Of a stretch of 64,000 nucleotides of DNA, positions 3,701 to 64,000 are shown one piece after another (within the stretch, counting starts at the first letter, position 1; every line of letters begins with the position of its first letter). Made by a program: the position numbers and the translations under genes. Below the pieces are notes generated by a model. It searched no databases. It was not told the DNA's origin and was given only the letters and a program-made list of their open reading frames with translations. This DNA is from Guillardia theta CCMP2712 (taxonomy: Eukaryota; Protista; Cryptophyta). The DNA lies in contig NW_005434667.1 of NCBI RefSeq assembly GCF_000315625.1, forward strand, positions 248,707 to 312,706, given 5' to 3'.

Positions 3701-6700
3701 AGCTTAAATGAGCTGATATGCTTGAGTCCAACACTGCGTTATGAGGAGGAGGGAATCTTTCCATTCATAGTCCAACGGAACGATTCTTTGAAGATAGACC
3801 GATTCGTCTTTGTAAATTTCACTGACGGCAACATGCATTATGAGGTCGGACCTGATTTGACTTTCAAGTATTTCAGCGAATGGCTGACCTTCAACCCTTC
3901 CTTTGCCGACAGACTCGGTTACATCCCTGTCCCAGAATGTCCCAAAGTGTACTTGCACGGCTTTGGATTCCAACAAGGAATGAAGTATCAGTGCATCATA
4001 TCGATGGGAACTCGGATTGCGACTGCTAGGGCGAACTTTGTGAACACGACGATAATCGAGATGATCCCGCCGGAGTGGGACCTGGTGACTGATTCGCATC
4101 GATATGTAACCAACAAAACAAATTTGACCTTGAGGAAGGCTTCCATCTCTTCAGAAGCCGCGTTTTGGTCGGATGTGTATGGTGGGAACGGCTCAACGTT
4201 GCCAAACCGCACGGCTCTGTGGATTGTGCAAATAAACAAACGGCCAGCTTACGATCTTGTGCAACGGAACTTGACGACTATAGTTGCAATAGAGAGCCAG
4301 GACATGATTAGGATCGAGTTTGCAACCAACTTGAGGAGCGGGGTCGACGGCAATCAGGAGCAGGTTCAGACTGAGAGAGACCAGAAGGTCACTTTCGAGG
4401 TCGCTAAAGGCTATTCTCGAATGTTTGAAGTTACTCCAAAGATAGACACCAACGGAATCCTGTCGTTCAAGGTCTGGCCTTATTCCTTTGGTAATACACG
4501 GATCTGTGTCGTTCTGCGGGACGATGGAGGCAAGCTTTTCGGAGGGATCGACGCTACAGAACCGAGGTGTTTTGATCTTATCGTAAACCCCAAATACCTG
4601 GGAGATTTCTTTTCCTTCGCCCAGCCTTCGTTGGAGATCTTGGAAAACTCTGGGATACAAGTGTTGGATCGATTCTTGATCAAGAGTCCCATGGGCCTCT
4701 ACAAAGATATTCTTCTCAACTTCTCTGCTGCAGGAGACAGTGACTTCTTCGAGACTGGACCTTTCGTCTCTGAGTTTGGAAGGTTGACGTTCAAGTGCTA
4801 TCCTTATGTCTACGGCACCACCACCATCTCTGTGTACCTCTCTTACTACAACTCTTCGGACGCACAAACGTACACGCACCACCAGGATCTGGTGTTGAAT
4901 GTGACTGCGGTCAACAACCAGCCGTCATTCACACTGAACGAGTCCAGGGCTCATATAGAAATTATCGAGAACGAATGCATTGCTGAACAATGCAGTTTTT
5001 CCGATCTAATCGTGTCGAAGTATTCGGGTCTGCATGATCTTAAAACAACCAGCCAAATGTTTGACTGGGACGAAAGCGATCAGAAAATGACGTTCCAGTT
5101 CGATCATGTGTTGGACACTGTCTTCGAGAGTATTCCTGTGATGAGCATCGATGGAAAACTTTCTTTCAAGCTCCTTCCAAACGTTTTTGGCAACTTTACG
5201 TTGTCGTTGACCCTCAAAGATGATGGTGGTACGGATCATGGAGGCGTTGACACCTCGGACCCTCAACAGATCACGATCTCCATCAAACCAAGGAACAATC
5301 AGCCGACTTTCAAGTTAAATTGCCCGGTCGAACAATGGACTCTGAATTGCTCAAAGGATTGCTCGAGCAACATATCACGTGGATGCTCTTCAAGAATCAA
5401 AATATCAGAGAATTGCATTGATTGCGAGCCAGGTCATCGCATAGTAGACGGATGCTCCAGGCATTATTTCATCCAAAGCTTTGCAGTAGATGTGTTTGCC
5501 TCAGCACAAAACCTGAAGAACGAGAAGGACCAACTTCTGTCCTTCCTCTTCGATCCCTTCACACCCAGACCTGGAACACCATCGTCCATGCTGACCTGAA
5601 CTCCAGTGGGTACCTCTCATTATGCCTCAATTACCGAAAGCATGGTACCGTGACATTCCAAGTGTCCCTTCAAGACAACGGGGGAACCGCAAATGGCGGG
5701 GTAGACACGATCGGCCCCATCTTCCTGACTATCCGTGTAGAGCCTGTCAACCAGCCCCCCAGCTTCAAGGTGGCTGCCCTGGCTGACTTCGGGGCCAACG
5801 TCCTACACCTGTGGACATCGAGCGGGCAGTCGACGGTAGAGGGCTTTCTCGTAGATATCCTCAACGGACATGCCGACTCGAGCGGCAGTGACCTGGAGGC
5901 CGTACAGTCTCACACATTCTACATAGAGACAGACCTGGCCTACTTCGTTCAAGGGCCGAAGATAGACGCCAACGGGACGCTGACGTTAGAGGTGAAGGCG
6001 GGGATGAGCGGGGAGGTCAACATGAGCATCACGATGGCGGACGACGGGCGGACGGACGACGGGACGGTGAACCCCGAGGACCCGGGGTGGAGGGGCCTCA
6101 ACGTGACACAGATCTGCAAGGTGGTGATATCAGACGGGTACCTGAAGCTGTCAGGGGCGGAGATGCCGGGGATGTACAACTGGAGCGAGCGGATGGGAGA
6201 CGCGATGAACCTGTCTCGCTTCCTGGGAGTAGGCCGGGAGTACGTGAGGGACGGGGGGAGTGAGTACGAGGTGACCGTAGGTAGCGTGACGGGGCTGGTA
6301 GAGGCGTACAGGCGGGCGTATGACGCGATCGAGGGGAGGAGGTACGTGCTGCCGTCAGGGCGGGGCATCGAGAACGTGACGCTGCGGCGACGCAACTACG
6401 GGCAGTCAGCGTCGCTGAAGGTGGCGGAGGCGGGGATCACGGTGGTAGGGCTGGAGTACGACGCGAGGCATCCGCTGGTGAGGGAGGGGTTCTTCTACGA
6501 CATTATGGAGCCGGAGAACACGACGATGGACCTGGACGGGAACTCGGTGATCTCGTTGAGGGTAGAGGCGGTAAGGTACAAGCGATATCCAGAGGAGACG
6601 AGCTGGAGGGAGAATGAGGGAGACGGGGGGCTATTTGTGGAGGACAAGAACGTGAGTCGAGTAAGCACGAACTGCCATCCAATCTGTCGGAACGCGACGC

Positions 6701-9700
6701 TACGGCTGGTCCAGAATCCCCTGGGTTTGAATGGGGTGGTAGAGTTCGACATTCTGTTGGAAGATGCAAAGAACGGAAGTTTTACGGTGGAGGTGGTCTT
6801 AGTACTTAAAACTCCTGCTGTAGTGCAGATGGTAGAAGACGATGAAGAATTCTTTCTGCAGTCATTCATCAACATGAGCTTCATCGGCAATATGACAGAT
6901 TTGACAGACTTTGCCCCCTTGACATTCCAGACCAATTTTACAAATAGGAGTGCTCAATACGGTTCGAACAGTTTCAGGATCGAATATACGTTTCTCAATC
7001 TTTCCTCTTCGTACTCTGTCGTAATTTCGCCGCTGCCCAACCTCTTTGGACTTTTCTACATGCAGACCTGTGTGTCCCGCACAGAAGCTCCTCTTAAGTC
7101 CATCTGCTTTGAATGGGAGCTGAACGTGATCGGCGTGAACGATCCTCCAGAGTTCAACCTCACCAAACGCTTCATGTCCAACGAGGACGAGTTTTGTGTG
7201 AATCAGTATAATTCTTCAGGACTATTGGACATCCCAGTCTCTCCAGGAAATTCTTGGGAACAGAGCCAGCAGATGACGTTTGTCTTCTCATTTCTTTACG
7301 GCGATAGCAACATCTTCGAAGTTCCTCCTGCCATACGCATCGACATGGACAAGGCTGTCCTCACGTACAAGACCCGCTGCTCTGGGCGAGGGCTTGCGAT
7401 CTACTCGGTGATACTAGTTGACAACGGAGGTTGGAGCAATGGAGGGAAGAACTCTACCTTGCCTCGGAACATCTCCTTCTATGTCCAGCCCAGAAACCGT
7501 CCTCCGACCTTCATGTTCGGAGCGTCAGTGGTGACGCACGGACAAGTTAGTTTCTTGGACCTGCTGGAAGATGAGCCAAGGACTCAGCTCGTCAACTTCA
7601 CTCGCAACATCGCGAGGGGTCTGCCTGAAGACAAACTGGAGAAGACTCAGTCCGTGAGCTTTCAAGTGCTCTTCCTCAACGGCAGCGAATGGATCTTTGG
7701 GCAAAACAACTTCCCAGCCATCTCGAGCAACGGCTCCCTGTTCTTCAGGGTATCGAGCAATCGATACGGTTACGTCTACGTGAACGTGAGGATCCTCGAT
7801 GATGGCGGTGAAGCTCGCGGCGGCATCAACCGCTCAGACTGGAAACTCCTCAAGATCTCAGTACTGCCAGTGAACGATCGACCGACTTTCACGTTAGTCC
7901 TCAATCGCGTCCGGGTGAATGAGGCGGTAGACAGCAACACTTCTTCTGTTGTGCTCTCTTCCTTTGCCTTCGACATCAGCCCCGGGCCCTACGAGCGGGA
8001 CCAGCACGTCACTTTCCGTGTAGCAGCCGTCGCCTCTCGAGTCCCTTCCAGAGAGCCATATCCGTGGAGCTCAATGGTGGGAAATCTCTTCGGACAAGTG
8101 AAGCTAGCTGACGGCCAGCTGTTTGTGAGCGGAAGCAACATTTTGATCTCTAACTCGGGGACTCTTTCCTTGCAGCTCCTCCAGTATCGAAACGGGGAAG
8201 CGAATTTCTCGTGTTATCTCAGTGACGACGGAGGCGTTGTCAACAACGGGTTCAATCGAAGTCTGCCTCAGTCTCTTTCCCTCGTCGTTGATCCAGTCAA
8301 TCAGCCACCGTCGTTCACCTTGACCTCACATGTGCTCGAGCTGCAGGAAGGCTCTCAAGAGTTCTACAGAAACTTCGCAAAGAATATCAGCGCTGGGATG
8401 TGGGACGAGAACATTCAGAGCTTGACGTTTGTCATCAATACAATCTTCGGCCCTCGACAACTCTTCCAATCCTTCACGATCGACTGCCAGGACTCTGCGA
8501 CTTGTCCCAGCTCGACCGCCAATCTGAGCATACTGGTCCTCCCCTATCACTTCGGGAACGTCACTCTCAACGTCTCACTCCAAGATCCGTTCAATGCAAT
8601 CCAGAGCGCCACGTTGGTTGTCAATGTCCTGCCGGTGAACCAGCCTCCCTCCTTCCGAATCCGCACAAGCATGCTCATAGTGGATGAGGGAAGCTCTTGT
8701 ATCTCCGACTCCAGCGCCCTCTCAGACGAGTGGATCGACTTCATCATGCAGCCTTCTCAATCTGATTGCCGCACAGCACCAGATTTCCTCCACTTGCACT
8801 CTGGGCTGATATTCTACGACATGGGACCCTTAGAGGGAGGTTATGAATTCGTCTGCCCGCCAGAAACAGCTTGCGAGGAACAGATCCCTGTGTTCAACGT
8901 CACCTGCATGGATGTCTCCCCTCCTCTCTTCTCTGAGCAGCCTTCCGTCGACTCCAACGGCACCCTCAGGTTCTCTCTGGTCCCGATCGCCAGCGGCAAC
9001 GTATCCTGCATGATTCAGATGCGGGACTCCAACATCCTGATCGGACAGCCTATCTTCGCTGAGGCCCAGGAGCTGCAGATCTTTGTGACTCCGGTTAACA
9101 ACAGGCCCCACTTTGAGCTGATAGTGCACAACGTCACGGTGTTGGAAGACTCTCCGAAGTTTGACTTGAGAGTTGCCGACAACATTTTTGCTGATGGACA
9201 AAGCGGGCTGACTGAGACCAATCAGAAGATCTCGTTCATCGTTTCCGTCGTTTCTCACCCCGAAATCTTCTCTCCCAACGGCCTGCCGAGTGTGGATGCG
9301 GGAGGAAATCTGACGTTTGGCTTGGCGGCCAATCAGTTCGGGACGAGCAACCTTAGCATCACAGTGGTTGATGACGGCGGTGGGCACAACGGCTTGCAAG
9401 GCAACACAAAGTACCTTGAAGTCAACGTTTTGCCTGTTAACAACCCTCCAACTTTTCAAGTAGTGGAGAACGTCTCTGTGGATGAGAACTCAGGCTTTCA
9501 GCTGTTTTCAGTAGTTTCCAGCATCACTCCTGGACCTGCCAACGAACATTGCCTCCACCCTTCGACCTGGTGTCAGAATCAGAGTTTGACCTTCTTTGTC
9601 AGAGACGTTATGGGCATCTCAAACCTCTTTTTGGATCCTCCTACCATCGATCTCCAAGGCAGGCTGTCGCTGAACCTCACCACGTTCGAAAGTGGACCCG

Positions 9701-12700
9701 CCAAGATTCTCTTCAATGCTGTAGATGACGGTGGTACGGTCCCAGGGGCAGGGGAGAATCGTTCAAACACCGGCATCATCGATGTCTCGGTGCTGCCCAT
9801 CAATCAGCCTCCTGCGTTCAGCTGCGGGCTGATAGGGAGCCAAGGGGAAGGGTCCAACAATTCTCAGGCAGTGATCTACTCTAGGAAGAACCAGGGAGTG
9901 GTCCTCCTCTCAAGCTTCATCCAGGATATCACCACAGCCCGCGGCTTCCCTGGCAGGGCTGCGGTGGAGCATGCCAGGGGTTCTAGCCAGCTCAGTTTCG
10001 TAGGCCCGAATTTCACGTCATGGTTCTCAGTGAGGGGGCTGGAGTACTCGTCAGACTTTGTGATCAGCCCGGATAAGAGGCACTTGTACTCTATCGAGAC
10101 TGAGAGAGACTCGCTCATCATCCTCAACATCTCTCAGCCCCATGGCCAGACGTTCCTCGATCGCCTCTCTAACAACCAGAACCGCCTCCGCTTCACCAGG
10201 TTGTCCTCCAACACGTCGAATCCTGTGAACATCCAGGGCAACGTCGCCGTCTGCGGCATCAACGGTTTCTCCAACTCGTCCGAGACATTCTTCGTGTCGA
10301 GCACCGGCTGCGATCCTTACTTTGACGTGTACCGCGATATCATGCAGCCAGCCTCCTCCTCTTGCAGTCCTGCCTGCCAGGACGAGACATCCAGGACAAC
10401 CGTCGGGCTGTGGAACCTCAACTACGAGGCGATGAAGGGGAGGATGAACTCCAACTCTTTGGGAGCTGGGCTCAAGCTGGACTGCTCCGATCCCCTCTAT
10501 TGTCAGTTCGAGAGGCCCGTGAACTCCGAGCTCTGCAACGAGAAGTACAAGAGTCATATCCAACCCGCCGGCATCCGCGACCAGACGAGCTTCCTGGGGG
10601 CTGCGGTGCTCCTCGGACCGCTCTGCAAGGAGGGCTTCTCCGGTGACTGGGACCGAGCAGACTTCGCACTGTCGCTCAAGAACTTTCTGGTCAACGACGG
10701 GAGGGAGGAGGGTCTACAGTTTGATGGAAAGCTGAACCCTGGGCTGGTGGTCTCGAAAGACATCGACCAGCTCGTGGACGGAGTCCCGTCGAGCTCGAAA
10801 CTTCCGCTAGAGGAGATAAGCATGGAGGTCTGGTTCATCCTAGCGCAGAAAGACATCAACCTTGGAGGCCTTATGAGTATCCAACAGCTCAGCCCCCTCT
10901 GCGCCAAGGGCTGGAGTTTGACCTACTCGACAAAGGTGACAGGAGGCCAGTCGGAGACCCAGCTAGTCTTCTCCATCTCGCTGGAGGCGAACCTGGGCTC
11001 GGGTCAAGGAGGCATGATCAGCGTTGACTATGCTGTTCAGGGGGAAGGTGTGTTCGTGGATTGGACGCAGGTCGTGGCATCATACAACAGGTCTCACATC
11101 CTGCTGCACGTCAACGGGCAGCTGGCTGCCTTGAAGGCAGCATGCAACCAGGAAGACTGCGGCAACATCGTCTACCCAGCGTCGTACAGCACCGGGGGGA
11201 GGTGCAAGGCAGGGGCCACCATGTTCTCGATAGGAGCGTATCACAACGGCCGGACAGAAGAGACCTTCACCCATGTGGGAGCGATCAAGCGCGTCCGTGT
11301 CACCAATCACTCGCTGTCGACCAGCACAATCTCCCAGCTCTATCAGGATGCCTCTACCCCTGCGAGCCTGCGGCGGACAGCCATGTACAGCTCTGACTAC
11401 TGGGTGCAGCTCAAGAATTCGTCGGGGATTTACTCGCCAACTTCGACATCCGCCATGGTCGACGAGCATCTGTCGCTGCAACTCTTCGGTCGCTTCGACT
11501 CTACGGGCATCTACCGCCTCGAGTTCGAGGCCACGGCTGCCAACATGAGCTCCGACAACTGCTCGCTGGGAGGCTCGGAGGCTGACGGCTTCTACCAGAC
11601 CCTCATCTGCTTCACTCCCTACTGGACCCTCGGGTACCGCTGGACCAACGTGTCGGTGAGCAAGAAGGTAGGGGGGGGGTGGTACCGACTGTGGCAGAAA
11701 GTCTGCATCTCGAGCTTGTGCGGGTACTTGCCCATCACTGCAAGGCCAACAAGTTGGTGGACAGACTCGCAGCGTCTGTTGCTCCCCGGGATGACCGGAG
11801 CCATGACTGACTTTCTCTTCTACACTCGATCCCTAGTGTTTCTCCTCGAGAGCAGCAGTAAGAACCTTGTTTCCGCTCAATTCTGCGCATCTCCGATCGT
11901 CAACGCCAGCGCAGGAGCATGCGACGGTCTGGATCAGCTTCCGACTGACAGAGTGAAAGGGTCAGCTTCCTCCATCACCTTCTCTCGCAATGGCAATGCG
12001 TTCCTGGCCGTCGCCAACTTCTGGGATGGTCGGGAATTCCGAGTGACAAGCCCCATCTTTCAGCTGGACGTGGCCAGCAGGCAGCTGCTCCCTCTGCAGG
12101 ACGTCCAGACGGATGGCGCCAGGCAGTGGCTGCACTTGGAGCTGAATGGAACGGATTTCTTGATGGTGGCCAACTTCAACAGCGAGTCAGCGGTTTATCC
12201 ATTCCAGGCCGATAGCGATCTCCTCGACGAGGCTTCCATGGTCTCCATCCCCACGAAGCATGCTGCTGCCATGACTCAGTTCGAGAGATCGGGACGTTTG
12301 TTCGTCGCCTTTGCGTCCTTCACCTTCGATGAGATGACTTCGTCGGACGTCTACATGCTCTCGTCTCCTGTTGGAACCTCAGACGTCTTCTTCACGCTGA
12401 TCAGCCAAGTCAACATCACAAGAGCAGTGGACGTGAAGTACTTCCAAGACAACAACGAATTATACCTTATCTATGCGTCATTGGATGCTGGTGCTTCTGC
12501 TGTCTATCGGTTGGACTTCTCCTCTCCTACTGACTTACAACTCGTTAAGGTTCAAGCTTTGCTGACTGCAGGTGTCACATCCATAACAACATTCTACGAC
12601 CCCAACGTCTACTGCACCCTGGCCAAGACCGATGGAGTCTTGAGTGTGCTTCGATGGAACGGGACCAGGTTCCTCGGGGTGGTGAATGAGAATACTCTCC

Positions 12701-15700
12701 CAGACGACGCTGCTGGGGGTCAAGACATCTCCGCTGCTAACGTCTTCGCGTCTACCGTCGTGACTGCCCCGACGGGGCTCTACCTTTCCTGGATGGGAGG
12801 GCACGGCCTGAGCTACCCGCTGCCCCTGGAGGTCTACGAGGGGTCACTAGAGCCGATCCGAGAGATGACTAGGCCCCTGCTAGTGGAGATGTCCCCCGAC
12901 GGTGACTTCCTCTACGTCGCTACTGAGACATCGCGAGCCATCCTGGCGTTCAGGAGGGACCAGCAGTCTGGCTACCTCCATCGCCATGAGGCAGGAGACT
13001 TCTTCAGCGAGTGGACGAAGAATCAGAGCATCCCGCGCCTCTTAGTCTCCTCTGTTGCCCTCGGCTTCCCTCTACGGGGCCTCAGCTCTATGATAGTTGA
13101 TACAGACATGCTGTACGCGGCAAGTTTCCTTGACTCCTCCATCGCCATTTTCTCCAGGAACCCTGTCAACGGCTCCCTTGCACTGCTCGATGTGATCTTA
13201 GCGTCCTCGGCTCGAACTGGTCTCACAGGCCTCAAGGCGATCTTTCTCAGCGGGTCGTTGCTGTACGCGGCCGGGATCAAGGATCAGGCCCTGTCGGTGT
13301 GGAGGAAGACAACCGAAGGCTCCCTGGCGTACGTCGATCACATCAGGAACGGCGAACGGATCCCGAGCACGTACCATGGAAACGTTCCGAGCCCCGATGA
13401 ACTGCAAATCTACAACTTCGTTTCCGACAGCCTATCGAACTTGACGTTCACAGGGCCACGGGATGCCGCCAACTTCGCCTTCGACGGTCGCACATTCCTC
13501 GCGCTTGCCTATGCTCCCTTTGAGACTGAATCTTCAGCCACTGACAAGTTCGCCGGGGTTGTGATCCTTGCCTACGCCGACTCCTCCATCCCCAAGTTCG
13601 ACCTTGTCCAGCTGCTTCAGAGCTCGCAAGTGAATCCCGGCTGCCTCGCTTTCTTTGAGACTCAGCAGGGTTCCTCCTTCTCACGCTTCCTCGTCGTGGG
13701 CAACATGTTCTCCAACATCCCTGGAAGGAGCGCAAGTGGCGTCGAAGTCTTCAAGTGGGACCAGGGACAGTTCAGCAGTGTTGGTGCCGTTGAGGACGAG
13801 ACCAAGTACTACCCGAGCAGCTTGAAGGTCTTCCAGCAAGGGGACACGACCTTCCTGGCCGTGTCAGTGCTATGGGATGGAGACTCGTACCAGATTCCTT
13901 CTCGTCTCTACCGGTGGAATCCTTCAGCTGAAAAGTTCGAGCTGGTACAGCTGTTCCCCTTGTCCAACGCTCTCGACGTAGAAGTTGCGGCTAGCAACAA
14001 CGAACTTCACATCATCTTCACTGCAGCGGAATGCAGCAACAGGCTGTCCTGCCTCCAGTTCTACTCCCAGCCTTCTTCTGCTGCTCCCTTCCAGCGGACA
14101 CAGCAGGTTCTCCTCGACGGGGCTGTCGACAGCACCACCTTGGAGATCGACGGCGAGCTCTTCGTCGCCATCGCCTGTCGTGAGTTTTTATCTCGGCCGA
14201 GCGAGTCTCCGCTCGGCAAGTACGACGGGTCCTCGTATGTCTACAAGTATCACAGAGACGTCAAGACCTTTGAGCGCTATCAGACGATCAGCGGTCAGGA
14301 CTTCCCGTGCATCTTCGAGAGCGGGATGGAGGCAGTATGGCAGAATTACTTCTGCAGCGACCAGTGCTCATTCAGGGAGGGCTGGAGCTCCGACGTCCTC
14401 GAGCAGTTCCGAGGAGCTACGTCAGTCACTTCCTTCCGATCGCAAGGAGAGTTGTACCTCGTTATGGCACAGTCCGTGTGTGAGCTCAACGCCGACTGCT
14501 CCTCCATCCAGCCGCAGTCTACCGTCCTGCAGTGGAACAAGCACGACAAGAAGTTTGGAGAGCTGCTTTCCCTCACCGACTTCGAGAGCATCCGCCTCAA
14601 GGGCTATCCTGTCGCTCCCCAGGACCTCACGCACCACCAGTTCCCCCTCCGGCTTGACATCGGCCGAGCCCTGCGCGTCAAGTACGTGGAGTTTGCAGAC
14701 GAACCTTACCTCTTGGCTCTCAGTCTCAGTAAGGGAACTCTCCTTACGCACTTCAAGTTCGATCAGATCTCGGGCCTCCAGAGCCCCTCCCTCATCTCCT
14801 CCCTCCCTGACGATCCCTTCCTCTACGTCGTCAACGAGCCGTACGGCCAAGTCTCGTCCTTCAGCAAGTGGGGCTATCCCGAGAGCTCCTCCTACGACTT
14901 CAGCCACTGCCCGAGCTCGACCCGTCCTGCTTGCCTTGCGTTCGTCAATTCGACTACCGTCAACATGAACGCTCAGATATCAAAGTTTCCTCAGCAGATC
15001 TCCGGCACGAAGCGAGTGTTCCTCGAGCGAGGCAGCTGCCTCTCCTCTACCAGCCAGTGCACCTTCATCAACTTTCACGCTGCTAACAAGAGGAACGAGC
15101 TTCGTTGCGGGGCCCAGCCTATCTACCCCTCAGATGCCGTCGTCAACCCGAGAGACAGGGCTGCCTGTCAGTCTGTCGACTTCCACATCGTCAAGGAACA
15201 GACTGCAGGCACGTCAGACTCGCTCAAGTTCGTTCCCGTAGTCTACGGCAACGGCAGCCTGCTTTTCGAAACTTCCTTCGGTCGTTTTGGATCCAACAGC
15301 TACAAGATCTTACTGAGAGACAGTGACAACTCCTCCTCCTCTGTCCTTGACCTCAAGATCATCATCAACGACACCAACACAGCCCCGACCTTCGTCGCCT
15401 ACGACATCGTCATGAATGAGATGTCCACAGGAAGCAGCGGCCTCGAGCTCGTCTTTGCCACCGGCGTCAGCGCAGGTTCCAACGAGACCAACCAGAACAT
15501 TACGTGGCTCTTCTCCTACAGCTCCCCACAGCTCTTCTCGCAGCAGCCCATCCTCAGCTTCAGCAGAGATCTCCTTGGAAACCTCCAGGGCATCGTGAAG
15601 TTCCCAGCCAACACTGCCATCATGAAAGGCACGGCCGATTTCTCCGTCAGGCTGGCTGACGATGGTCCTTCATCACTACTCACCGGGGACAGGAACGTGT

Positions 15701-18058
15701 CAGATCCTGCTCGCTTCCTCCTCACCGTGCGCTCGCTCTACGTCCCCTCGTTCCAGCTCGTCAGGTCCACCCTCACTCTCGAGGCAGGGAGTACCTGGTC
15801 TGAGAGCCTCGTCAACAACATCCGGACGAAGCCGTACGACACGACAGCGACTAATTATCACTTCCAGCTGCAGCCCATCAGCAGCTCAGCAGGGCTGGCG
15901 ACAGACATCATGAGCGCGGTCAGCTACTTCAACATCAGCAAGTCAGGTGTCGGCAGTTTCTCCGTCCTCGCTGACGCCTGCGGCGTCTACCAGTCGAACA
16001 TCCTCCTGGTCGTTGACGATGCAGAGCAGCCTCGCCCCCCGTCCTTCCTCAGACCCTTCGAGCTTGCGGTCACCTCGCAGTCTGTCGTGGAGCTGAGGCA
16101 GCCGGGGAGCCTGAAGGTGCTGCAGGGAAGCACTTTCAGCGCTAAATGGTTCGAGTTCCTCACCGTCCGTGACTGCCATCGCCTGAGCACCCGACCAGTC
16201 ACTTACGCGCTGCAGTTTGACAACTCCGACAAGTTCCTTGAGACCCCGCAAACTCTCAGCGACGGGACCCTCAGCTTCCGCCTTGTCTCCACCTTCGTTG
16301 GCGTCATCCGCCTCAACGTCACCATGAGCTTTGACGCCTCCGTCACCGTCACCGTCCGCAACAACCACCTGCCCTTCGAGCTCTTCGTCGAGAGGAAGGC
16401 CGGACTACCCACCTTTGAGATCTCTCAGACCCTAATCAAGGTTGTCCAGAGCCAGTCTCCCCAGCTCGTCCCCGGCTACGTCAGAGTCCTGCCGTACCTC
16501 GTGCAGAACTGCAGCTTCTTCGTGAATCTCGCCACCTCCATCAGCATGTTTGACGCGACGCCGCTGATCGATGCGGAGGGCAACCTTCGCTTCACCACCG
16601 GGCGGGACCATGGCGACGTCGTTGTGTTTGTCATCTTCAGGTTCGACGACGGAGTGGACCAGGTGTACGAGACAGCCAACGCCACCATCTCCATCATCCC
16701 TCAGCCCCGCATCCTCTCCATCTTCCCCAGTCTCGTCCCCACTCGCGGGGCCAGCATCACCATCCGAGGAGAGAACTTTGCGGGAGCTCAGGAGTCCGTG
16801 GATGTGTTTGTGGGAGGGAGAACCTGTCAGACCATCCGTCAGCTCTCTCCAGCTGAGCTGACCTGCGTCGTCCCAGCTGGTTTCGGCATGATGAGCGTGT
16901 CCGTCAACATCAGCAGCGAAAGTCTCTCGCGCTCCTCCCCGACCGTCTCGTCCATCTACATGGGCCACATCGCCATCGCAGGCTCGACCGCCGGCAACAT
17001 GCAGGCCCGAGGCCTCGTCGCTCTCGCTCCCTCCGCGACCAGGAGCGTGTGGCCTCTCAGTTTCCTTCCTTCAGCCCTCCGCCTCCCCGTCGACGCGTCT
17101 CACGGCGTGCGAGCGATGGCTTCATCTTCAGGAGCAGGAGGCGACCTGACCCTCTACCTCGGGGGCTCCTTCTCCAGCCTCGGGGGACTGCAAGTACAAA
17201 ATGTAGCAGGTGAGCAGGGAGAGAGCGGAGTAGGAGGAGGAAGAAGGAGGGGAAAGAAGGGAGTGTTGAGGACGGAGGAAGCAAGCTGACGTCTCGTGCA
17301 GGCTGGAAGGAGAATCGATCGTTCGCGCTGGGGCTTGGGGTCAACGGGGCTGTGTCAGACATGTGCGTCGTCAAGGGGAGCCTCGTCGTCGTGGGCTCCT
17401 TCACCAAGGCGATGAACCAGCAGGACGTGGTTGACTCTCCTTTCATCGCCTCCTGGGACGGCAGCCGGTGGATGCCCTTCGGCGATGGCTCGCTGGTCTA
17501 CGGGAGCATCCTCTCAGTCCTGTGCAGCGAAACAGAGGCGAGTGAGGGGGAGGGGGAGGGAGCTGCTGACCCAGACTGCAGGTCTTCGTGGGCGGGAGGA
17601 TCGAGAAGATCGGCGACATGGCGGTCGGTCGAGTCGCCAAGTTCTCGTTCCTGGAGGGCAGCTGGAGTGTCCTCGGCAACGGGACCGGACTGAGAGGAGG
17701 CAACGTGCACGCTATGGTGGAGATGGACGGGGCTGTGCTGATAGGAGGAAGCTTCACCGCTGCTGGACAGGTAGCTTTCTCTCTCCCTTCCCACTCCCTG
17801 ACTGATGCTGCCCAGCTTACCTCCGGCAAGCTCGTGGCCTGGAGGAGGACGAGGTTTGAGGCGCTGGGGGAGATAGGAGGAGACGTGTACTCGCTGGCGG
17901 TGGTGGGGACAAGTCTGTTCCTCGGAGGAAACTTCTTGTCCATCAACGGGGTCAGCATAGAGCGCGTCGCTCGCTACCAGAACGGTCGCTTCTTCGCCCT
18001 TGACCCCGTGAGAGACGGTACCGTCATGAGCATCGCTTTCGCTGATGGCTGCATGTGA
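765..18058 (+). CDS. Giant secreted/cell-surface multidomain protein (~5,700 aa): signal peptide, ~11 IPT/TIG repeats, ~15 cadherin-like/Ig-like repeats, LamG, two EPTP/EAR propellers, lactonase-type propeller, IPT, C-terminal Rax2-like propeller
   Basis: ORFs 765-1772, 1733-5599, 5422-17289, 17352- and 17588-18058 join into one product. Motifs: GPAxGG..I.V.G.GF (IPT); VNQPPSF and DDGG..NGG (cadherin-like); ISMEVWF..WTQVVASYN..LHVNGQL..GAIKRVRV (LamG); FLAVANFWDG (EPTP); SPDGDFLYVA (lactonase blade); LYLGGSFS, IGGSFTAAG, LFLGGNF (Rax2-like). Introns 17210-17301, 17538-17581 (GC-AG), 17771-17815 restore frame. Frame changes near 1770 and 5555 are unresolved. Confidence 0.8.
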
Positions 18059-57140: not shown

Positions 57141-57525
57141 GCTGAAGCCGAGCTGAGAAATTTTCAGGTAATTCTGCCGGACCAGTCCGTCATGACACCA
57201 GCTTCGACCACCATCACCAACCAGGTCAGAGCTCAGCAGGAGCCCAGCTATGAAAGCGACTGATCGCAGCCCACAGCTCCTGGATCTGCTCTTGCAGCAT
57301 GTGCTCGAGAGCAGCACTGAGTTGTGACTCTACGAGCGAGGTTGAAGGAACAAGCAAAAAGAAGATGATGAGACGTGAAACGACCAGGCAGAGGACCCGC
57401 TGCCGTCTGCCGACTTGGTAATGAATCTTGAAAGTATGTCGATAGATTCAACAGAGGTTACAAACACTCCCTCAAGGATTTTCCGCATCGCTTCACTCAG
57501 ATGCTTGACTGTTATCTTCTGTTAT

Positions 57526-58020
57526 CCTGAGCGGGCGCAGCGGGCGCCGAGACCGAGACCGCCATTGACGGCGACGATGCCCAAGGACCCCGTCGCGGGG
57601 GAGCAAGCAGGCGAGCGCGGACCAGCCGCGAGCATCCCAGTGGCATCGAGCTCTCCGGAGGCATCAGACGTCACAGTGATGGACGGAGAGGCTTCGCCAG
57701 CTCCTCGACGGCCTTCAGCTCCACTCTTCGTCGGAGTCAGGCACTTTCTACCTTATGCAGGTTACTTTTGGTCTTGTTTTGTTGTGTGTGTTTGTGCAGC
57801 TTCTCGCTGTGCGCTGTGTGCATGCAGGTTTAGCTTGTTCCTGCTTTGTTCTGCTTGAGGAACTTTTTACCTTCTGCGAGTAAACATCCTCAGACTTATG
57901 CAAGTAAAACTCTGGCGTCGAGACCTCCGGCGAAAACTCGACAAAGTCCGAGGAGGAGGTTGTTGCACAGCCTCCATCTCTGCTCATTTTCCTGAGCGGG
58001 ACCCGAGCCACTCCCGCTCA
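57526..58020 (-). mobile_element. Older diverged retroelement fragment interrupted by antisense 3'-end fragments (~57742-57890)
   Basis: 57566-57740 and 57920-57960 resemble 60000-60270; the sequence between them is a diverged copy of the element 3' UTR in the opposite orientation. Confidence 0.7.
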
Positions 58021-58112
58021 GGGTGTTGCGCCGCAACCAGACCCTACAATGCCAGCCCACGCGGGAAGCCACACAAGCAGAGAGGGGCAAGCGGCACAGC
58101 AGGGGACGTGAA

Positions 58113-58193
58113 CTGTGCGCTGTGTGCCTGGAGGTTTAGCTTGTTCCTGCTTTGTTTTGCTTGAGGCACTTTTTACCTTCTGCCAGTAAATCC
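58113..58193 (+). mobile_element. 81-nt 3'-terminal fragment of the CRE-like element
   Basis: Ends in GCACTTTTTACCTTCTGCCAGTAAATCC. Confidence 0.85.
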
Positions 58194-58414
58194 GTCTCTT
58201 ACAGAGTGGCTCAGGTCTCGCTCAGGAAAATGAGCAAAGATGGTAGACTGCAAGACCCTATCCTGCGACTTGAGCGAGTGTGTCCTGCGGCTGTGCAAGG
58301 TGAGGATATCACGCTGCTGATCGGTCAGCGCAGCGCGAGCATGCACATGGCGAGGGAAGACGCGCATGACAAGAGGAGTCACATTGCGCTGCGCAGGCGG
58401 AGCAATAAAGTGCT

Positions 58415-58933
58415 CTTGGGCATTGCTGCGGCGTCGCCGCCGTCACGGGCGGCTACCACTGACTCGGCTACCGCTGACTCGGAGGCTAGCGAGGAGGACT
58501 ACCTCGAGCGGTACCGTGTTCCAGTGTCCAGCCTCCCTCCGTCCGCTGCCCCTGGCGGACCCCCGGGCAGCGCCGGCTCCTTGTCGGCGGCTGCCCTTTC
58601 TCCGTCCGCGGCCGCCCGCTTTGTGGCGGCAGCGGACGTCTCGACTGACAGTGGTCAGTCGGCTGCCTCCGGGTATCGCGTCTAAGGGATTTTATTCCTC
58701 CTGCATGCTCCTGCTGCTTGTTGCTTGATTGCCTGACCCTTCGGCTGCTTGTCTGCGCGGCTTCGCGCTTGGGCTGGCGCTGCCGCGTCTGGGTGCCAGC
58801 AGTGCTGGATCTTTTCGGGCTTGTGTTTTGTGTGTGATTGTGCAGCTTCTCGCTGTGGACTGTGTGCCTGGAGGTTTAGCTTGTTCCTGCTTTGTTTTGC
58901 TTGAGGCACTTTTTACCCTCTGCCAGTAAATCC
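58415..58933 (+). mobile_element. 5'-truncated CRE-like element copy on the plus strand
   Basis: Near reverse complement of 59480-60033; ends CCAGTAAATCC. Confidence 0.85.
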
Positions 58934-59476
58934 ACTATATGCATGAGACGAGTCGACGAGAGCGCGCAAACCAGGGATGTATCCACTATTGAGTGTACCA
59001 CAGATGCCGGGGGGCAATCATCAGGCATAGCAGCCGGGGCAGGTGGGATCGCCGCGCCATCTGCAGCCGGTGCAGGAGCCCTCACACGACGGTAGAGGAT
59101 CGCTCCAGCATTATGAACGAAGTCGTGCGCCTCAACGAAGAAGGTCGCCAGAGGATGTTTCTGGGCACGGAGAGATCTCGAGCAGTGAACGTCCAGGCTA
59201 TGAGGAGAGGGCAGCGTCCGGGACATTGGCTGGTCAGAGTACCAAGCGAGGAAGCGAGCGATAGCCGTATAGTAAACAGCGGGGTGTAGACCATCAGAGG
59301 GCGTGAACTTAACTCGTCNNNNNNNNNNNNNNNNNNNNNNNNNNNNNNNNNNNNNNNNNNNNNNNNNNNNNNNNNNNNNNNNNNNNNNNNNNNNNNNNNN
59401 NNNNNNNNNNNNNNNNNNTCTAGCAGGTCGGGATGCGCGGCGAGGTACTGCGAGGAAGGCCAGCGGTGGTGATAGC
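58934..59476 (-). mobile_element. Internal ORF fragments, probably the RT-to-zinc-knuckle linker of the element, flanking an assembly gap (59319-59418)
   Basis: Open frame GLHPAVYYTAIARFLAWY... and LSPPLAFLAVP, resembling linker motifs of CRE-clade ORFs; bounded by element 3' ends on both sides. Confidence 0.5.
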
Positions 59477-61516
59477 ATAGGATTTACTGGCAGAAGGTAA
59501 AAAGTGCCTCAAGCAAAACAAAGCAGGAACAAGCTAAACCTCCAGGCACACAGTCCACAGCGAGAAGCTGCACAATCACACACAAAACACAAGCCCGAAA
59601 AGATCCAGCACTGCTGGCACCCAGACGCGGCAGCGCCAGCCCAAGCGCGAAGCCGCGCAGACAAGCAGCCGAAGCCCATGCGCGAAGCCGCGCAGACAAG
59701 CAGCCTAAGGGTCAGGCAATCAAGCAACAGGCAGCAGGAGCATGCAGGAGGAATAACATCCCTTAGACGCGATACCCGGAGGCAGCCGACTGACCACTGT
59801 CAGTCGAGACGTCCGCTGCCGCCACAAAGCGGGCGGCCGCGGACGGAGAAAGGGCAGCCGCCGACAAGGAGCCGGCGCTGCCCGGGGGTCCGCCTGGGGC
59901 AGCGGACGGAGGGAGGCTGGACACAGGAACACGGTACCGCTCGAGGTAGTCCTCCTCGCTAGCCTCCGAGTCAGCGGTAGCCGAGTCAGTGGTAGCCGCC
60001 CGTGACGGCGGCGACGCCGCGGCAATGCCCAAGGACCGGCGTGACCCGACCGATGCCGGGGAGGAAGCAGGCGAGCTCGGACCAGCAGCAAGCACCCCAG
60101 GGGTGTCGAGCTCTCCGGAGGCACCCGACGTCACAGTGAGGGACGGAGACGCCTCCGAGTCGCCAGCTCCGCGCCGATCGTCGGCGCCACTCGACGTGTT
60201 TCCCCCATCGGAGTCGGAGACCTCCGGCGAAGACTCCTCCTCGGGCGACTCGACAAAGTCCGAGGAGGAGCTGTCCTCTGGCTCGAGAAGTGCTTGCGCC
60301 CGCAAGGGCGTCATGCGCCTCGCACCAGACAAGAGCGCCTCCAGCGTCAGCTGCATAGTGAGGCGCTGATAGGTGGCGGCGCGTTTGCGAGCCAGGACCT
60401 CAGCAGCAGGGCCGTCATCAGGCACGAAGTGCCGACCAAACGCCGAGCCGCATCCTCAAGAGGCATCGAGCGCTGAGCAATGATGTCCGCGAGATACCAG
60501 ATGAAGCGGAGGGTGTCAGGATGCAGGGTACCGTCCGTCGAGATGGCAAGAGGGATGAACGCTCGAGGAGGAGTAGTCATAGCATATGCAGCGCGATGTT
60601 TGCGAATCTTCTCAGACGCTGCAACATGGAGGGCGTCGAGGTTGACCTCCCCCCACTTGGTCAGGTCGGCAGAGCTACCAATGTAAGGGTGGACCAACGT
60701 CACGTCCGCCATCAAGCCCTCGTACTGCTCGGACCCTCGATCGCGGATTCCAGGGATGTGGATATCGCCCTTCATCTTGCGGCCATGAGGATGGGAGGGT
60801 ACCTGCCGTCGAGAACGAGGATCCCCCACTGTTTTCACTTTTTACCTTCTGCCAGTAAATCCTATACTGTATCGATGACACTCTGAAGACCAGCTTCGTT
60901 CAGCATCGACCGAATCGTACGAGTAAGGTTGTCATGCGCCGTGGGAAGCTTGGAGGATCGGCGTTTGCAGGTCTGGAGATGATGTGCAGCAACGGAGGGG
61001 TCGAGCTCGCGCTGACATCCATCACATTCCGTCGGACACTGCCGTGGTATTTCTCAAGCGCCAGGTGGACAGAGAGGTCAAAGAGACGAATCTGTGACTG
61101 GACCCACGGGAGAAACGGAGATGACCCCTGGAAGAAGAAGCGGAGCTTCTGAAGATGGCTCGCCCTCACCAGCGTCTTGAACATGAAGCCATGCTGGACG
61201 AGCCCGAGCTTCGAGAGCTCTTCGTTGAGGGTAGAAACCTTCGCTCGGAGCTGACTAGCATGAAATCCATCCGTGCCGATAGGCAGGCCGCCAAGTGTAA
61301 TCCCGCCAGTGACGACCTCGAAGTGAAGAAGTTGAGTCTTGAGACGGTGCTTAAGGCTCTTCTTCAGCTGCGAGAGATCAGGGTGTTGATGCCAGGAGGG
61401 GATGTAAACTTTCGACTCGCGAGGTTGAATCTCTAGCTTCAGATCAGCCAACATGTACTTCTTCATAGCGGACGTAGCTGCAACGGCATCCTCGAGTGGA
61501 CCGACAAGTACGATGT
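59477..61516 (-). mobile_element. CRE-like non-LTR retrotransposon, 5'-truncated and internally deleted (copy D)
   Basis: RT C-terminus IVLVGPLEDA..LKLEIQPRESKVY..GITLGGLPIG..F; CCHC knuckle CDGC-x10-HHLQTC then AHD; RLE KGDIHI..ADVTLVHP..AASEKIRKH..FIPLAISTDG; 3' end AGTAAATCCTAT. Confidence 0.88.
60833..60865 (+). mobile_element. 33-nt antisense insertion of the element's own 3' end, with 5-bp TSD (ACTGT)
   Basis: Empty site is present in copy B at 63077-63081. Confidence 0.93.
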
Positions 61517-61719
61517 ATAGGATTTACTGGCAGAAGGTAAAAAGTGCCTCAAGCAAAACAAAGCAGGAACAAGCTGAACCGGCAGGCACACAGTCCACAG
61601 CGAGAAGCGGCACAATCACACACAAAACACAAGCCCGAAAAGATCCAGCACTGCTGGCACCCAGACCGTCGGACGCGGCAGCGCCAGCCCAAGCGCGAAG
61701 CCGCGCAGACAAGCAGCCT
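61517..61719 (-). mobile_element. ~200-nt 3'-end-only copy (copy C)
   Basis: Matches 59477-59670. Confidence 0.9.
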
Positions 61720-61720
61720 T

Positions 61721-63593
61721 ATAGGATTTACTGGCAGAGGGTAAAAAGTGCCTCAAGCAAAACAAAGCAGGAACAAGCTGAACCGGCAGGCACACAGTCC
61801 ACAGCGAGAAGCTGCACAATCACACACAAAACACAAGCCCGAAAAGAACCAGCACTGCTGGCACCCAGACGCGGCAGCGCCAGCCCAAGCGCGAAGCCGC
61901 GCAGACAAGCAGCCGAAGGGTCAAGCAATCAAGCAACAAGCAGCAGGAGCAGCCTAAGGGTCAGGCAATCAAGCAACAAGCAGCAGGAGCATGCAGGAGG
62001 AATAAAATCCCTTACACGCGATACCCGGAGGCAGCCGACTGACCACTGTCAGTCGAGACGTCCGCTGCCGCCACAAAGCGGGCGGCCGCGGACGGAGAAA
62101 GGGCAGCCGCCGACAAGGAGCCGGCGCTGCCCGGGGGTCCGCCTGGGGCAGCGGACGGAGGGAGGCTGGACACAGGAACACGGTACCGCTCGAGGTAGTC
62201 CTCCTCGCTAGCCTCCGAGTCAGCGGTAGCCGAGTCAGTGGTAGCCGCCCGTGACGGCGGCGACGCCGCGGCAATGCCCAAGGACCGGCGTGACCCGACC
62301 GATGCCGGGGAGGAAGCAGGCGAGCTCGGACCAGCAGCAAGCACCCCAGGGGTGTCGAGCTCTCCGGAGGCACCCGACGTCACAGTGAGGGACGGAGACG
62401 CCTCCGAGTCGCCAGCTCCGCGCCGATCGTCGGCGCCACTCGACGTGTTTCCCCCATCGGAGTCGGAGACCTCCGGCGAAGACTCCTCCTCGGGCGACTC
62501 GACAAAGTCCGAGGAGGAGCTGTCCTCTGGCTCGAGAAGTGCTTGCGCCCGCAAGGGCGTCATGCGCCTCGCACCAGACAAGAGCGCCTCCAGCGTCAGC
62601 TGCATAGTGAGGCGCTGATAGGTGGCGGCGCGTTTGCGAGCCAGGACCTCAGCAGCAGGGCCGTCATCAGGCACGAAGTGCCGACCAAACGCCGAGCCGC
62701 ATCCTCAAGAGGCATCGAGCGCTGAGCAATGATGTCCGCGAGATACCAGATGAAGCGGAGGGTGTCAGGATGCAGGGTACCGTCCGTCGAGATGGCAAGA
62801 GGGATGAACGCTCGAGGAGGAGTAGTCATAGCATATGCAGCGCGATGTTTGCGAATCTTCTCAGACGCTGCAACATGGAGGGCGTCGAGGTTGACCTCCC
62901 CCCACTTGGTCAGGTCGGCAGAGCTACCAATGTAAGGGTGGACCAACGTCACGTCCGCCATCAAGCCCTCGTACTGCTCAGACCCTCGATCGCGGATTCC
63001 AGGGATGTGGATATCGCCCTTCATCTTGCGGCCATGAGGATGGGAGGGTACCTGCCGTCGAGAACGAGGATCCCCCACTGTATCGATGACACTCTGAAGA
63101 CCAGCTTCGTTCAGCATCGACCGAATCGTACGAGTAAGGTTGTCATGCGCCGTGGGAAGCTTGGAGGATCGGCGTTTGCAGGTCTGGAGATGATGTGCAG
63201 CAACGGAGGGGTCGAGCTCGCGCTGACATCCATCACATTCCGTCGGACACTGCCGTGGTATTTCTCAAGCGCCAGGTGGACAGAGAGGTCAAAGAGACGA
63301 ATCTGTGACTGGAAACGGAGATGACCCCTGGAAGAAGAAGCGGAGCTTCTGAAGATGGCTCGCCCTCACCAGCGTCTTGAACATGAAGCCATGCTGGACG
63401 AGCCCGAGCTTCGAGAGCTCTTCGTTGAGGGTAGAAACCTTCGCTCGGAGCTGACTAGCATGAAATCCATCCGTGCCGATAGGCAGGCCGCCAAGTGTAA
63501 TCCCGCCAGTGACGACCTCGAAGTGAAGAAGTTGAGTCTTGAGACGGTGCTTAAGGCTCTTCTTCAGCTGCGAGAGATCAGGGTGTTGATGCC
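61721..63593 (-). mobile_element. CRE-like element, 5'-truncated (copy B)
   Basis: Near-identical to copy D (the 220-aa ORF translates identically); lacks the 33-nt insert and has an 11-nt deletion near 63312. Confidence 0.9.
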
Positions 63594-63595
63594 TC

Positions 63596-64000
63596 TAGGA
63601 TTTACTGGCAGAAGATAAAAAGTGCCTCAAGCAAAACAAAGCAGGAACAAGCTGAACCGGCAGGCACACAGTCCACAGCGAGAAGCTGCACAATCACACA
63701 CAAAACACAAGCCCGAAAAGATCCAGCACTGCTGGCACCCAGACGCGGCAGCGCCAGCCCAAGCGAGAAGCCGCGCAGACAAGCAGCCTAAGGGTCAAGC
63801 AATCAGGAAACAAGCAGCAGGAGCATGCAGGAGGAATAACATCCCTTAGACGCGATACCCGGAGGCAGCCCGACTGACCACTGTCAGTCGAGACGTCCGC
63901 TGCCGCCACAAAGCGGGCGGCCGCGGACGGAGAAAGGGCAGCCGCCGACAAGGAGCCGGCGCTGCCCGGGGGTCCGCCAGGGGCAGCGGACGGATGGAGG
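63596..64000 (-). mobile_element. CRE-like element 3' portion running off the window (copy A)
   Basis: Starts TAGGATTTACTGGCAG on the + strand; matches 59478-59920. Confidence 0.9.

What the first reader, a model, noticed from the sequence alone, without database searches (positions are those of the whole stretch)
60828..60870. 33-nt self-insertion with a 5-bp TSD defines the RNA 3' end and the cleavage stagger
Seen: copy D reads ACTGT-TTT-CACTTTTTACCTTCTGCCAGTAAATCCTAT-ACTGT, where copy B has a single ACTGT. The insert is 30 nt of the element terminus plus three extra T, antisense to the host copy. Inference: a minimal target-primed reverse transcription product that shows a precise non-polyadenylated 3' end, a ~5-nt stagger and recent activity.
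Basis: partly seen in the sequence, partly recalled or inferred. Interest (0 to 1): 0.75.

Follow-up and report, generated by a model that had tools for sequence, protein, structure and literature searches.

The report
Tiny stub of an R2-like retrotransposon
A 33-base piece of a jumping gene's tail end really did insert into another copy of the same jumping gene in the alga Guillardia theta, but it is one of hundreds of such stubs, so it shows ordinary retrotransposon copying and does not fix the exact end of the RNA.

Summary
At window 60828-60870 copy D reads ACTGT, TTT, the last 30 nt of the element (antisense to the host copy), ACTGT. Copy B has one ACTGT (63077-63081). The filled junction occurs once in the 87-Mb genome; the empty site occurs 124 times.

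The element is an R2-like non-LTR retrotransposon of Guillardia theta. It has a reverse transcriptase followed by a CCHC plus PD-D-K restriction-like endonuclease, and no AP endonuclease domain was found.

The reading as a minimal target-primed reverse transcription product is supported in kind:
- In 11 islands, 66 of 132 termini belong to copies under 70 nt.
- 32 insertions checked against empty paralogues have duplications of 2-12 bp, most often 5.
- Nine of 29 have 1-4 extra, mostly T, bases at the 5' junction.
- No terminus carries poly(A).

The claim of a precise 3' end is not supported. The conserved sequence stops at AAATCC. TAT follows in 53% of copies, and 2-14 variable bases lie before the duplication. 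This insert is the only one of 32 stopping exactly at TAT. The 5-bp stagger is typical but not fixed.

Recent activity is plausible: D and B each gained a stub while differing by one substitution in about 1.6 kb.

Earlier notes of this scan on other DNA of this genome already describe these stubs.

The parts
60828..60832 (+). Left copy of the 5-bp target-site duplication, ACTGT.
   Evidence: The empty site in copy B and in 124 paralogues has one ACTGT.
60833..60835 (+). Three extra T at the 5' junction that are not element sequence (AAA on the cDNA strand).
   Evidence: Nine of 29 other verified insertions also have 1-4 extra bases at this junction, mostly T.
60836..60865 (+). The stub: the last 30 nt of the element (27 nt up to AAATCC, then TAT), antisense to its host copy.
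   Evidence: exact match to the other termini, 0 expected by chance; the 27-mer has 744 hits in the genome and 0 in the reversed control.
60866..60870 (+). Right copy of the 5-bp target-site duplication, ACTGT.
59477..61043 (-). It is itself inserted into an older copy X, with a 5-bp duplication ACCAC (61044-61048 and 59466-59470 on the minus strand), two extra G at its 5' junction and the tail TAT+GCTATC.
   Evidence: The uninterrupted host site occurs 11 times in the 11 islands surveyed.
61044..61516 (-). Left part of the older host copy X (ORF residues about 348-504). Its continuation (residues about 500-726) lies at 59470 and downstream, across the N gap at 59320-59419.
   Evidence: tblastn; junction sequences.
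61517..63594 (-). Copy B, the empty-site paralogue. It carries the same X/Y junction as D, has a single ACTGT at 63077-63081, and holds its own nested 228-nt sense-oriented stub at 61720-61947 with an 8-bp duplication AGGCTGCT (61712-61719 and 61948-61955).
   Evidence: The composite junction occurs only twice in the genome, in D and in B.
63595..64000 (-). 3' part of a further copy (A) that runs off the window; its terminus variant ends ...CCTAG.

Best explanation
The 38-bp gain is an abortive, extremely 5'-truncated retrotransposition of an R2-like non-LTR retrotransposon of Guillardia theta into an older copy of the same family. The element encodes a reverse transcriptase followed by a C-terminal restriction-like endonuclease. 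Inferred steps: the endonuclease nicked the strand that serves as primer. Reverse transcription started at or near the 3' end of the element RNA (...AAAUCCUAU, no poly(A)) and copied only 30 nt. The polymerase added three untemplated A to the cDNA, which read as TTT on the sense strand. The other strand was cut 5 bp away, and joining and fill-in gave the ACTGT duplication. Shown directly: the insertion, its duplication, its identity to the family terminus, its uniqueness, the protein domains, and the same anatomy in 31 other insertions. Inferred: the RNA intermediate, the order of the nicks, and untemplated addition as the source of the extra bases.
For: Insertion and empty site.
Family anatomy:
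- The 27-mer terminus has 744 hits in the genome and 0 in the reversed control.
- Of 132 termini in 214 kb, 66 belong to copies under 70 nt and 28 to copies under 40 nt, with a continuous spread of truncation points.
- 32 insertions with perfect duplications, verified against paralogous empty sites, have lengths of 2-12 bp, most often 5.
- At the 5' junctions, 15 of 29 have no extra base (11 of these with 1 or more nt of microhomology) and 9 of 29 have 1-4 extra bases.
- None of the termini is followed by poly(A).
- One 102-nt insert with a 5-bp duplication consists of two stubs whose 3' ends face outward. This fits priming from both nicked strands.
Protein:
- RVT_1 at E 1.5e-6.
- A 15-sequence family profile hits solved R2 proteins at E 7e-14. 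The reverse-transcriptase stretch (1e-6) and the CCHC plus PD..D..K stretch (1.2e-3) are each significant on their own. L1 ORF2p reaches only E 0.2-0.6.
- No AP endonuclease family was found by Pfam.
Against: No RNA data could be examined, so the template and its true 3' end are inferred. The 3' junctions of the family are heterogeneous, unlike the precise 3' boundaries reported for RLE elements (PMC4640811). Either priming is preceded by untemplated addition or the RNA ends are ragged; I could not tell which. Raw reads were not available, and a scaffold gap lies 1.4 kb away. The predicted structure was too poor (pLDDT 39.5) to confirm the endonuclease fold.
Confidence: 0.85

Rival explanations
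1. The stub is a short cDNA or DNA fragment of the element captured as filler during end-joining repair of an unrelated double-strand break, not an endonuclease-initiated event.
For: The insert is very short and has extra bases at one junction. Junction microhomology and filler are also hallmarks of end joining.
Against: Every stub keeps the same polarity and the same 3' end, whereas random capture would give random fragments. Short duplications with a mode of 5 bp recur in 32 events. The double stub with both 3' ends facing outward fits priming from the two nicked strands.
Confidence: 0.07
2. A separate short RNA of about 30-35 nt (a mini non-autonomous element or a processed 3' fragment) is the template, rather than a truncated copy of the full-length RNA.
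For: Several verified inserts cluster at 29-35 nt between their duplications, and 28 of 132 termini belong to copies under 40 nt.
Against: Truncation points are spread continuously from 22 to more than 400 nt, with no single preferred start. The predicted hairpin just upstream of the stub region is no more stable than shuffled sequence (z 0.10).
Confidence: 0.05
3. The 38 bp are an assembly artefact in a highly repetitive region.
For: The junction is unique in the assembly, the region is nested repeats, and a 100-N gap lies at 59320-59419.
Against: Misassembly would not be expected to create a perfect 5-bp duplication around a correctly polarised terminus. The same anatomy recurs at 31 other sites on 10 other scaffolds.
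Confidence: 0.03

Closest known systems
R2 retrotransposons (Bombyx mori R2Bm, zebra finch R2Tg; solved structures 8gh6, 9dou, 9nl3)
   Same: A single ORF with a reverse transcriptase followed by a CCHC plus PD-(D/E)xK restriction-like endonuclease. They are the best and only significant solved relatives. Shared features are a non-polyadenylated 3' end, frequent 5' truncation and variable 5' junctions (PMC13580325, PMC4640811).
   Different: This family does not insert into 28S rDNA or any single sequence; its duplications are diverse, and 96% of downstream flanks are its own family. Its 3' junctions carry 2-14 variable bases instead of being precise. Pfam finds no N-terminal zinc-finger or Myb domain. 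Half of all copies are under 70 nt.
HERO and other RLE clades (CRE, R4, NeSL/Utopia)
   Same: They are RLE-encoding non-LTR elements. HERO contains many families without sequence-specific targets, and duplication length differs between families of one clade, from 0 to 20 bp in Utopia (PMC4640811).
   Different: Clade placement was not tested, because no reference sequences of these clades were at hand. Those clades are described with precise 3' boundaries, which this family lacks.
5'-truncated and twin-primed LINE-1 insertions (from my own knowledge of the L1 literature, not tested here)
   Same: Short 5'-truncated copies with duplications, microhomology or untemplated bases at the 5' junction, and inverted products from priming on both strands.
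   Different: L1 uses an AP endonuclease and a poly(A) tail. Here the endonuclease is restriction-like and there is no poly(A).
Zepp-type LINE clusters of green algae (Chlorella, Coccomyxa; from my own knowledge, not tested here)
   Same: LINEs nest into each other in one cluster per chromosome, and the clusters are proposed as centromeres.
   Different: As I recall, Zepp elements are polyadenylated L1-like elements. This family is RLE-type and lives in a cryptophyte.

Membership tests
Non-LTR (LINE) retrotransposon inserting by target-primed reverse transcription | Encodes a reverse transcriptase of the non-LTR type. | tested here: met
   RVT_1 at E 1.5e-6, just under Pfam's cut-off. The family profile hits R2 reverse transcriptases at E 7e-14, with the RT stretch at 1e-6.
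Non-LTR (LINE) retrotransposon inserting by target-primed reverse transcription | Copies share a fixed 3' end and are variably 5'-truncated. | tested here: met
   132 termini have copy lengths from 22 to more than 400 nt. Terminal repeats were not looked for.
Non-LTR (LINE) retrotransposon inserting by target-primed reverse transcription | Target-site duplications flank individual insertions. | tested here: met
   32 insertions have perfect duplications of 2-12 bp (mode 5) against paralogous empty sites. This insert has ACTGT.
Non-LTR (LINE) retrotransposon inserting by target-primed reverse transcription | An RNA intermediate is copied from its 3' end at the nick. | not testable with these tools
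RLE-bearing non-LTR elements (R2, R4, CRE, NeSL, HERO) | A CCHC motif and a PD-(D/E)xK restriction-like endonuclease lie C-terminal to the reverse transcriptase. | tested here: met
   Profile positions 475-626 align to R2 residues 989-1130 with an independent E of 1.2e-3. The alignment pairs C..C..H..C, the H of the RH motif, GD/PD, DVT and EK.RK. A single-sequence search of the domain found nothing, and the structure model was unusable.
RLE-bearing non-LTR elements (R2, R4, CRE, NeSL, HERO) | No AP (exo-endo-phosphatase) endonuclease domain. | tested here: met
   Pfam scans of P0001, P0022, P0027 and P0020 list only RVT_1 and weak chance hits.
RLE-bearing non-LTR elements (R2, R4, CRE, NeSL, HERO) | Precise 3' junction with the target. 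| tested here: not met
   2-14 variable bases separate AAATCC from the duplication in the 32 verified insertions.
R2 clade in the strict sense | Site-specific insertion into the 28S rRNA gene (or another single conserved target). | tested here: not met
   Duplication sequences are diverse, only A-poor. 127 of 132 downstream flanks are the element's own family, in either orientation.
R2 clade in the strict sense | N-terminal zinc-finger and Myb DNA-binding domains. | tested here: inconclusive
   Pfam reports none in P0001, but the true 5' end of the ORF was not established.

The most novel reading that the evidence does not exclude
The stubs are not just failed copies. The family's enzyme may be unusually prone to stop after 25-60 nt and may be directed to DNA or chromatin already made of its own copies. 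Stub insertion would then be the main process that builds and renews one retrotransposon island per chromosome (candidate centromeres) in a cryptophyte. The ragged 2-14-nt 3' tails would then record an unusual priming step, namely untemplated extension of the nicked DNA before the RNA is engaged.
Probability: 0.15. Interest if true: 0.7.

Novelty: new member of a known kind. Interest (0 to 1): 0.35.

Why it matters
On its own the insert is a clean natural example of a minimal retrotransposition product, which is useful but ordinary. Its value lies in context. It belongs to an apparently undescribed R2-like family of Guillardia theta: three text searches found no paper on it. Half the copies of this family are stubs under 70 nt, it nests almost only into itself, and every scaffold listed has one island. 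That makes the family a tractable natural record of how a restriction-like-endonuclease LINE starts and aborts reverse transcription. It is also a marker for candidate centromeres in a lineage where none are known. R2 enzymes are being developed for genome engineering (PMC13580325), so a relative without a fixed sequence target and with heterogeneous 3' junctions could be informative.

Tried and rejected
- A 20-mer scan of metagenome contigs gave two chance matches in unrelated sequence.
- The AlphaFold model of the 947-aa ORF had pLDDT 39.5 and was not used for fold search.
- phmmer of the whole ORF and of the endonuclease domain alone against solved structures found nothing. Only the 15-sequence profile did.
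- Rfam found no ribozyme or other RNA family in the region or in three island loci.
- Hairpin as a cause of truncation at about 30 nt: the fold is no better than shuffles (z 0.10) and truncation points are spread out. Rejected as unsupported.
- 3' transduction from a few master copies as the source of the variable tails: shared tails are no more frequent than a rough chance estimate. Of three long tails searched genome-wide, two are unique. The third recurs only as a duplicated site and as a partial match that runs into host sequence. Not supported, but not excluded for lost or unassembled sources.
- Polarised head-to-tail arrays as a general rule: rejected, since orientation is 62 to 60. The '204-nt copy' between D and B is B's own 3' end, split by a nested 228-nt stub.

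Full report
**Observation.**
The + strand at 60828-60870 reads ACTGT, TTT, a 30-nt block, ACTGT. The 30-nt block is identical to the 3' ends of the minus-strand copies at 59477 and 61517. By chance 0 such matches are expected in the window. In the alignment of copy D (59477-61516, minus) with copy B (61721-63594, minus), the site is a clean 38-bp gain in D. B has one ACTGT at 63077-63081.

The three T are not element sequence, because the element reads ...TTGAGG before CAC. In the whole 87-Mb assembly the filled junction occurs once. The empty site occurs 124 times with up to two mismatches. This is therefore a private insertion in D. It shifts the reading frame of the endonuclease-coding part near residue 815 of the intact ORF.

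**What the element is.**
The genome is Guillardia theta CCMP2712, as named by the sources of the homologous proteins. The 27-nt terminus has 744 hits in the genome and none in the reversed control. On each of the 18 scaffolds listed, all exact hits fall in one interval of at most 30 kb.

The longest ORF versions (P0001, 947 aa; P0027) have a weak RVT_1 match and no AP endonuclease domain. A full HMMER search found 757 relatives, and several cover the whole protein at 25-30% identity. A profile of 15 of them (A3) was compared with solved structures:
- It hits R2 retrotransposon proteins (9nl3, 9dou, 9nl2, 8gh6) at E 7e-14.
- Two stretches are each significant on their own: the reverse transcriptase (1e-6) and a C-terminal stretch (1.2e-3).
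- The C-terminal stretch aligns the CCHC motif, the H of the RH motif, GD/PD, DVT and EK.RK with the R2 restriction-like endonuclease.
- L1 ORF2p scores only E 0.2-0.6.

The element is thus an R2-like, RLE-type non-LTR retrotransposon. Its clade among CRE, R2, R4, NeSL and HERO (PMC4640811) was not resolved.

**Is the insert typical of the family?**
I surveyed 214 kb from 11 islands, which hold 132 termini.
- Copy length: 66 termini belong to copies under 70 nt and 28 to copies under 40 nt. Truncation points are spread continuously.
- Duplications: 32 insertions have perfect duplications when compared with paralogous empty sites. Lengths are 5 bp (10 cases), 7 (5), 3 (4), 4 (4), 6 (3), 8 (2), 2 (2), 11 and 12.
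- 5' junctions: 15 of 29 have no extra base, 11 of these with 1 or more nt of microhomology. Nine have 1-4 extra bases (A, C, T, CC, GT, GA, TTC, TTT, TTTT). The TTT of this insert is therefore usual.
- Double stub: one 102-nt insert with a 5-bp duplication is made of two stubs whose 3' ends both face outward, as if both nicked strands had primed on RNA 3' ends.
- Poly(A): no terminus is followed by it.
- Target: duplications are A-poor and pyrimidine-rich on the insert's sense strand but have no consensus.
- Flanks: 127 of 132 downstream flanks are the element's own family, 62 sense and 60 antisense among those abutting the junction. The antisense orientation of this insert has no special meaning.

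The conserved sequence ends at AAATCC. The next three bases are TAT in 70 of 132 copies, ATT in 14, and something else in the rest. In the 32 verified insertions, 2-14 variable bases lie between AAATCC and the duplication. This insert is the only one that stops exactly at TAT.

The insert therefore cannot by itself define a precise RNA 3' end. The tails do not look copied from a few master loci. Shared tails are no more common than a rough chance estimate. Of three long tails searched genome-wide, two are unique. The third recurs only as a duplicated site and as a partial match running into host sequence. Whether the tails are untemplated additions at priming or ragged RNA ends remains open.

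The 5-bp stagger is the most common value, not a constant.

**Local history.**
- A 1.57-kb 5'-truncated copy (59477-61043) sits inside an older copy.
- The older copy's two halves (ORF residues about 348-504 and about 500-726) flank it.
- Its features are a 5-bp duplication ACCAC, two extra G and the tail TAT+GCTATC.

Copy B carries the same composite junction, which exists only twice in the genome. D and B therefore share a recent origin. Since then D gained the 33-nt stub. B gained a 228-nt sense-oriented stub (61720-61947) with an 8-bp duplication AGGCTGCT. Outside the 5'-end junction and the 3' UTR, the two copies differ by one substitution over about 1.6 kb. Two stub insertions against so little point divergence fit recent and frequent activity. 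The two copies also differ in the last 130 nt of the 3' UTR, which I did not explain.

**Mechanism.**
The best-supported account is abortive target-primed reverse transcription. The endonuclease nicks one strand and cDNA synthesis starts at the non-polyadenylated RNA 3' end. Synthesis stops after 30 nt and three A are added to the cDNA. The second nick falls 5 bp away, and joining and fill-in complete the insertion. The review PMC13580325 states that 5' truncation is inherent to cDNA synthesis starting at the R2 RNA 3' end. The RNA intermediate and the order of the steps are inferred.

**Dead ends.**
- The structure model was unusable.
- The metagenome scan gave only chance hits.
- Rfam found nothing.
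- A predicted hairpin next to the stub region is not significant.
- Three text searches found no paper on a Guillardia LINE.

**Verdict.**
The insertion is real and neat, and it is correctly read in kind. It is one of hundreds of stubs, and it does not fix the RNA 3' end or a constant stagger. Earlier notes of this scan on other DNA of this genome (s1-443947, s1-431607) had already described the stubs and the islands. My tests agree with those notes.

Noticed in passing
G000 scaffolds C1-C19; window 57400-64000 is the start of the C7 island: On each of the 18 scaffolds listed, all exact copies of the terminus fall in a single interval of at most 30 kb. These islands are candidate centromeres. 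Earlier notes of the scan say the same.
   Followed up: partly
L036 about 5560-5670 (G000:C5:705560-705670): A 102-nt insert with a 5-bp duplication (AGATA) consists of two stubs in inverted orientation, with both 3' ends facing outward. It looks like priming from both nicked strands.
   Followed up: partly
window 61720-61947: A 228-nt sense-oriented stub with an 8-bp duplication AGGCTGCT is nested in the 3' UTR of copy B. The apparent '204-nt copy' at 61517-61720 is therefore B's own 3' end, and the head-to-tail array is partly an effect of nesting.
   Followed up: yes
window 59466-61048: The apparent internal deletion shared by D and B (ORF residues 504 to 758) is really the junction of a nested insertion (5-bp duplication ACCAC). 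B copies this composite, and the junction exists only twice in the genome.
   Followed up: yes
window 59477-59610 versus 61517-61660: D and B are nearly identical in the ORF but carry two different variants of the last ~130 nt of the 3' UTR (GGAGGTTTAG against GCCGGTTCAG, plus an 8-nt indel). This could come from template switching or recombination; it is unexplained.
   Followed up: no
L033 7607-9892, L043 3881-9123: Long ORFs that look like LTR-retrotransposon genes (judged by eye from the ORF ends, not scanned) lie inside the same islands, so the islands are not made of one family only.
   Followed up: no
protein P0104 (relative found): A 1577-aa relative of the ORF has a ubiquitin C-terminal hydrolase domain (PF00443, E 4e-29) N-terminal to the reverse transcriptase. 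It is either a protease-bearing RLE element or a fused gene model.
   Followed up: no
proteins P0022 and P0027 (GUITHDRAFT_104901, GUITHDRAFT_103214): The public gene models read through element junctions. P0022 starts in the end of one copy, translates its 3' UTR and terminus, and continues into the next copy. P0027 contains a repeated block. They are not real proteins as annotated.
   Followed up: partly
window 5422-17286 (+): An uninterrupted 3955-codon open frame lies far from the island. It was not examined.
   Followed up: no
window 59320-59419: A 100-N scaffold gap lies inside the older host copy, 1.4 kb from the finding.
   Followed up: no
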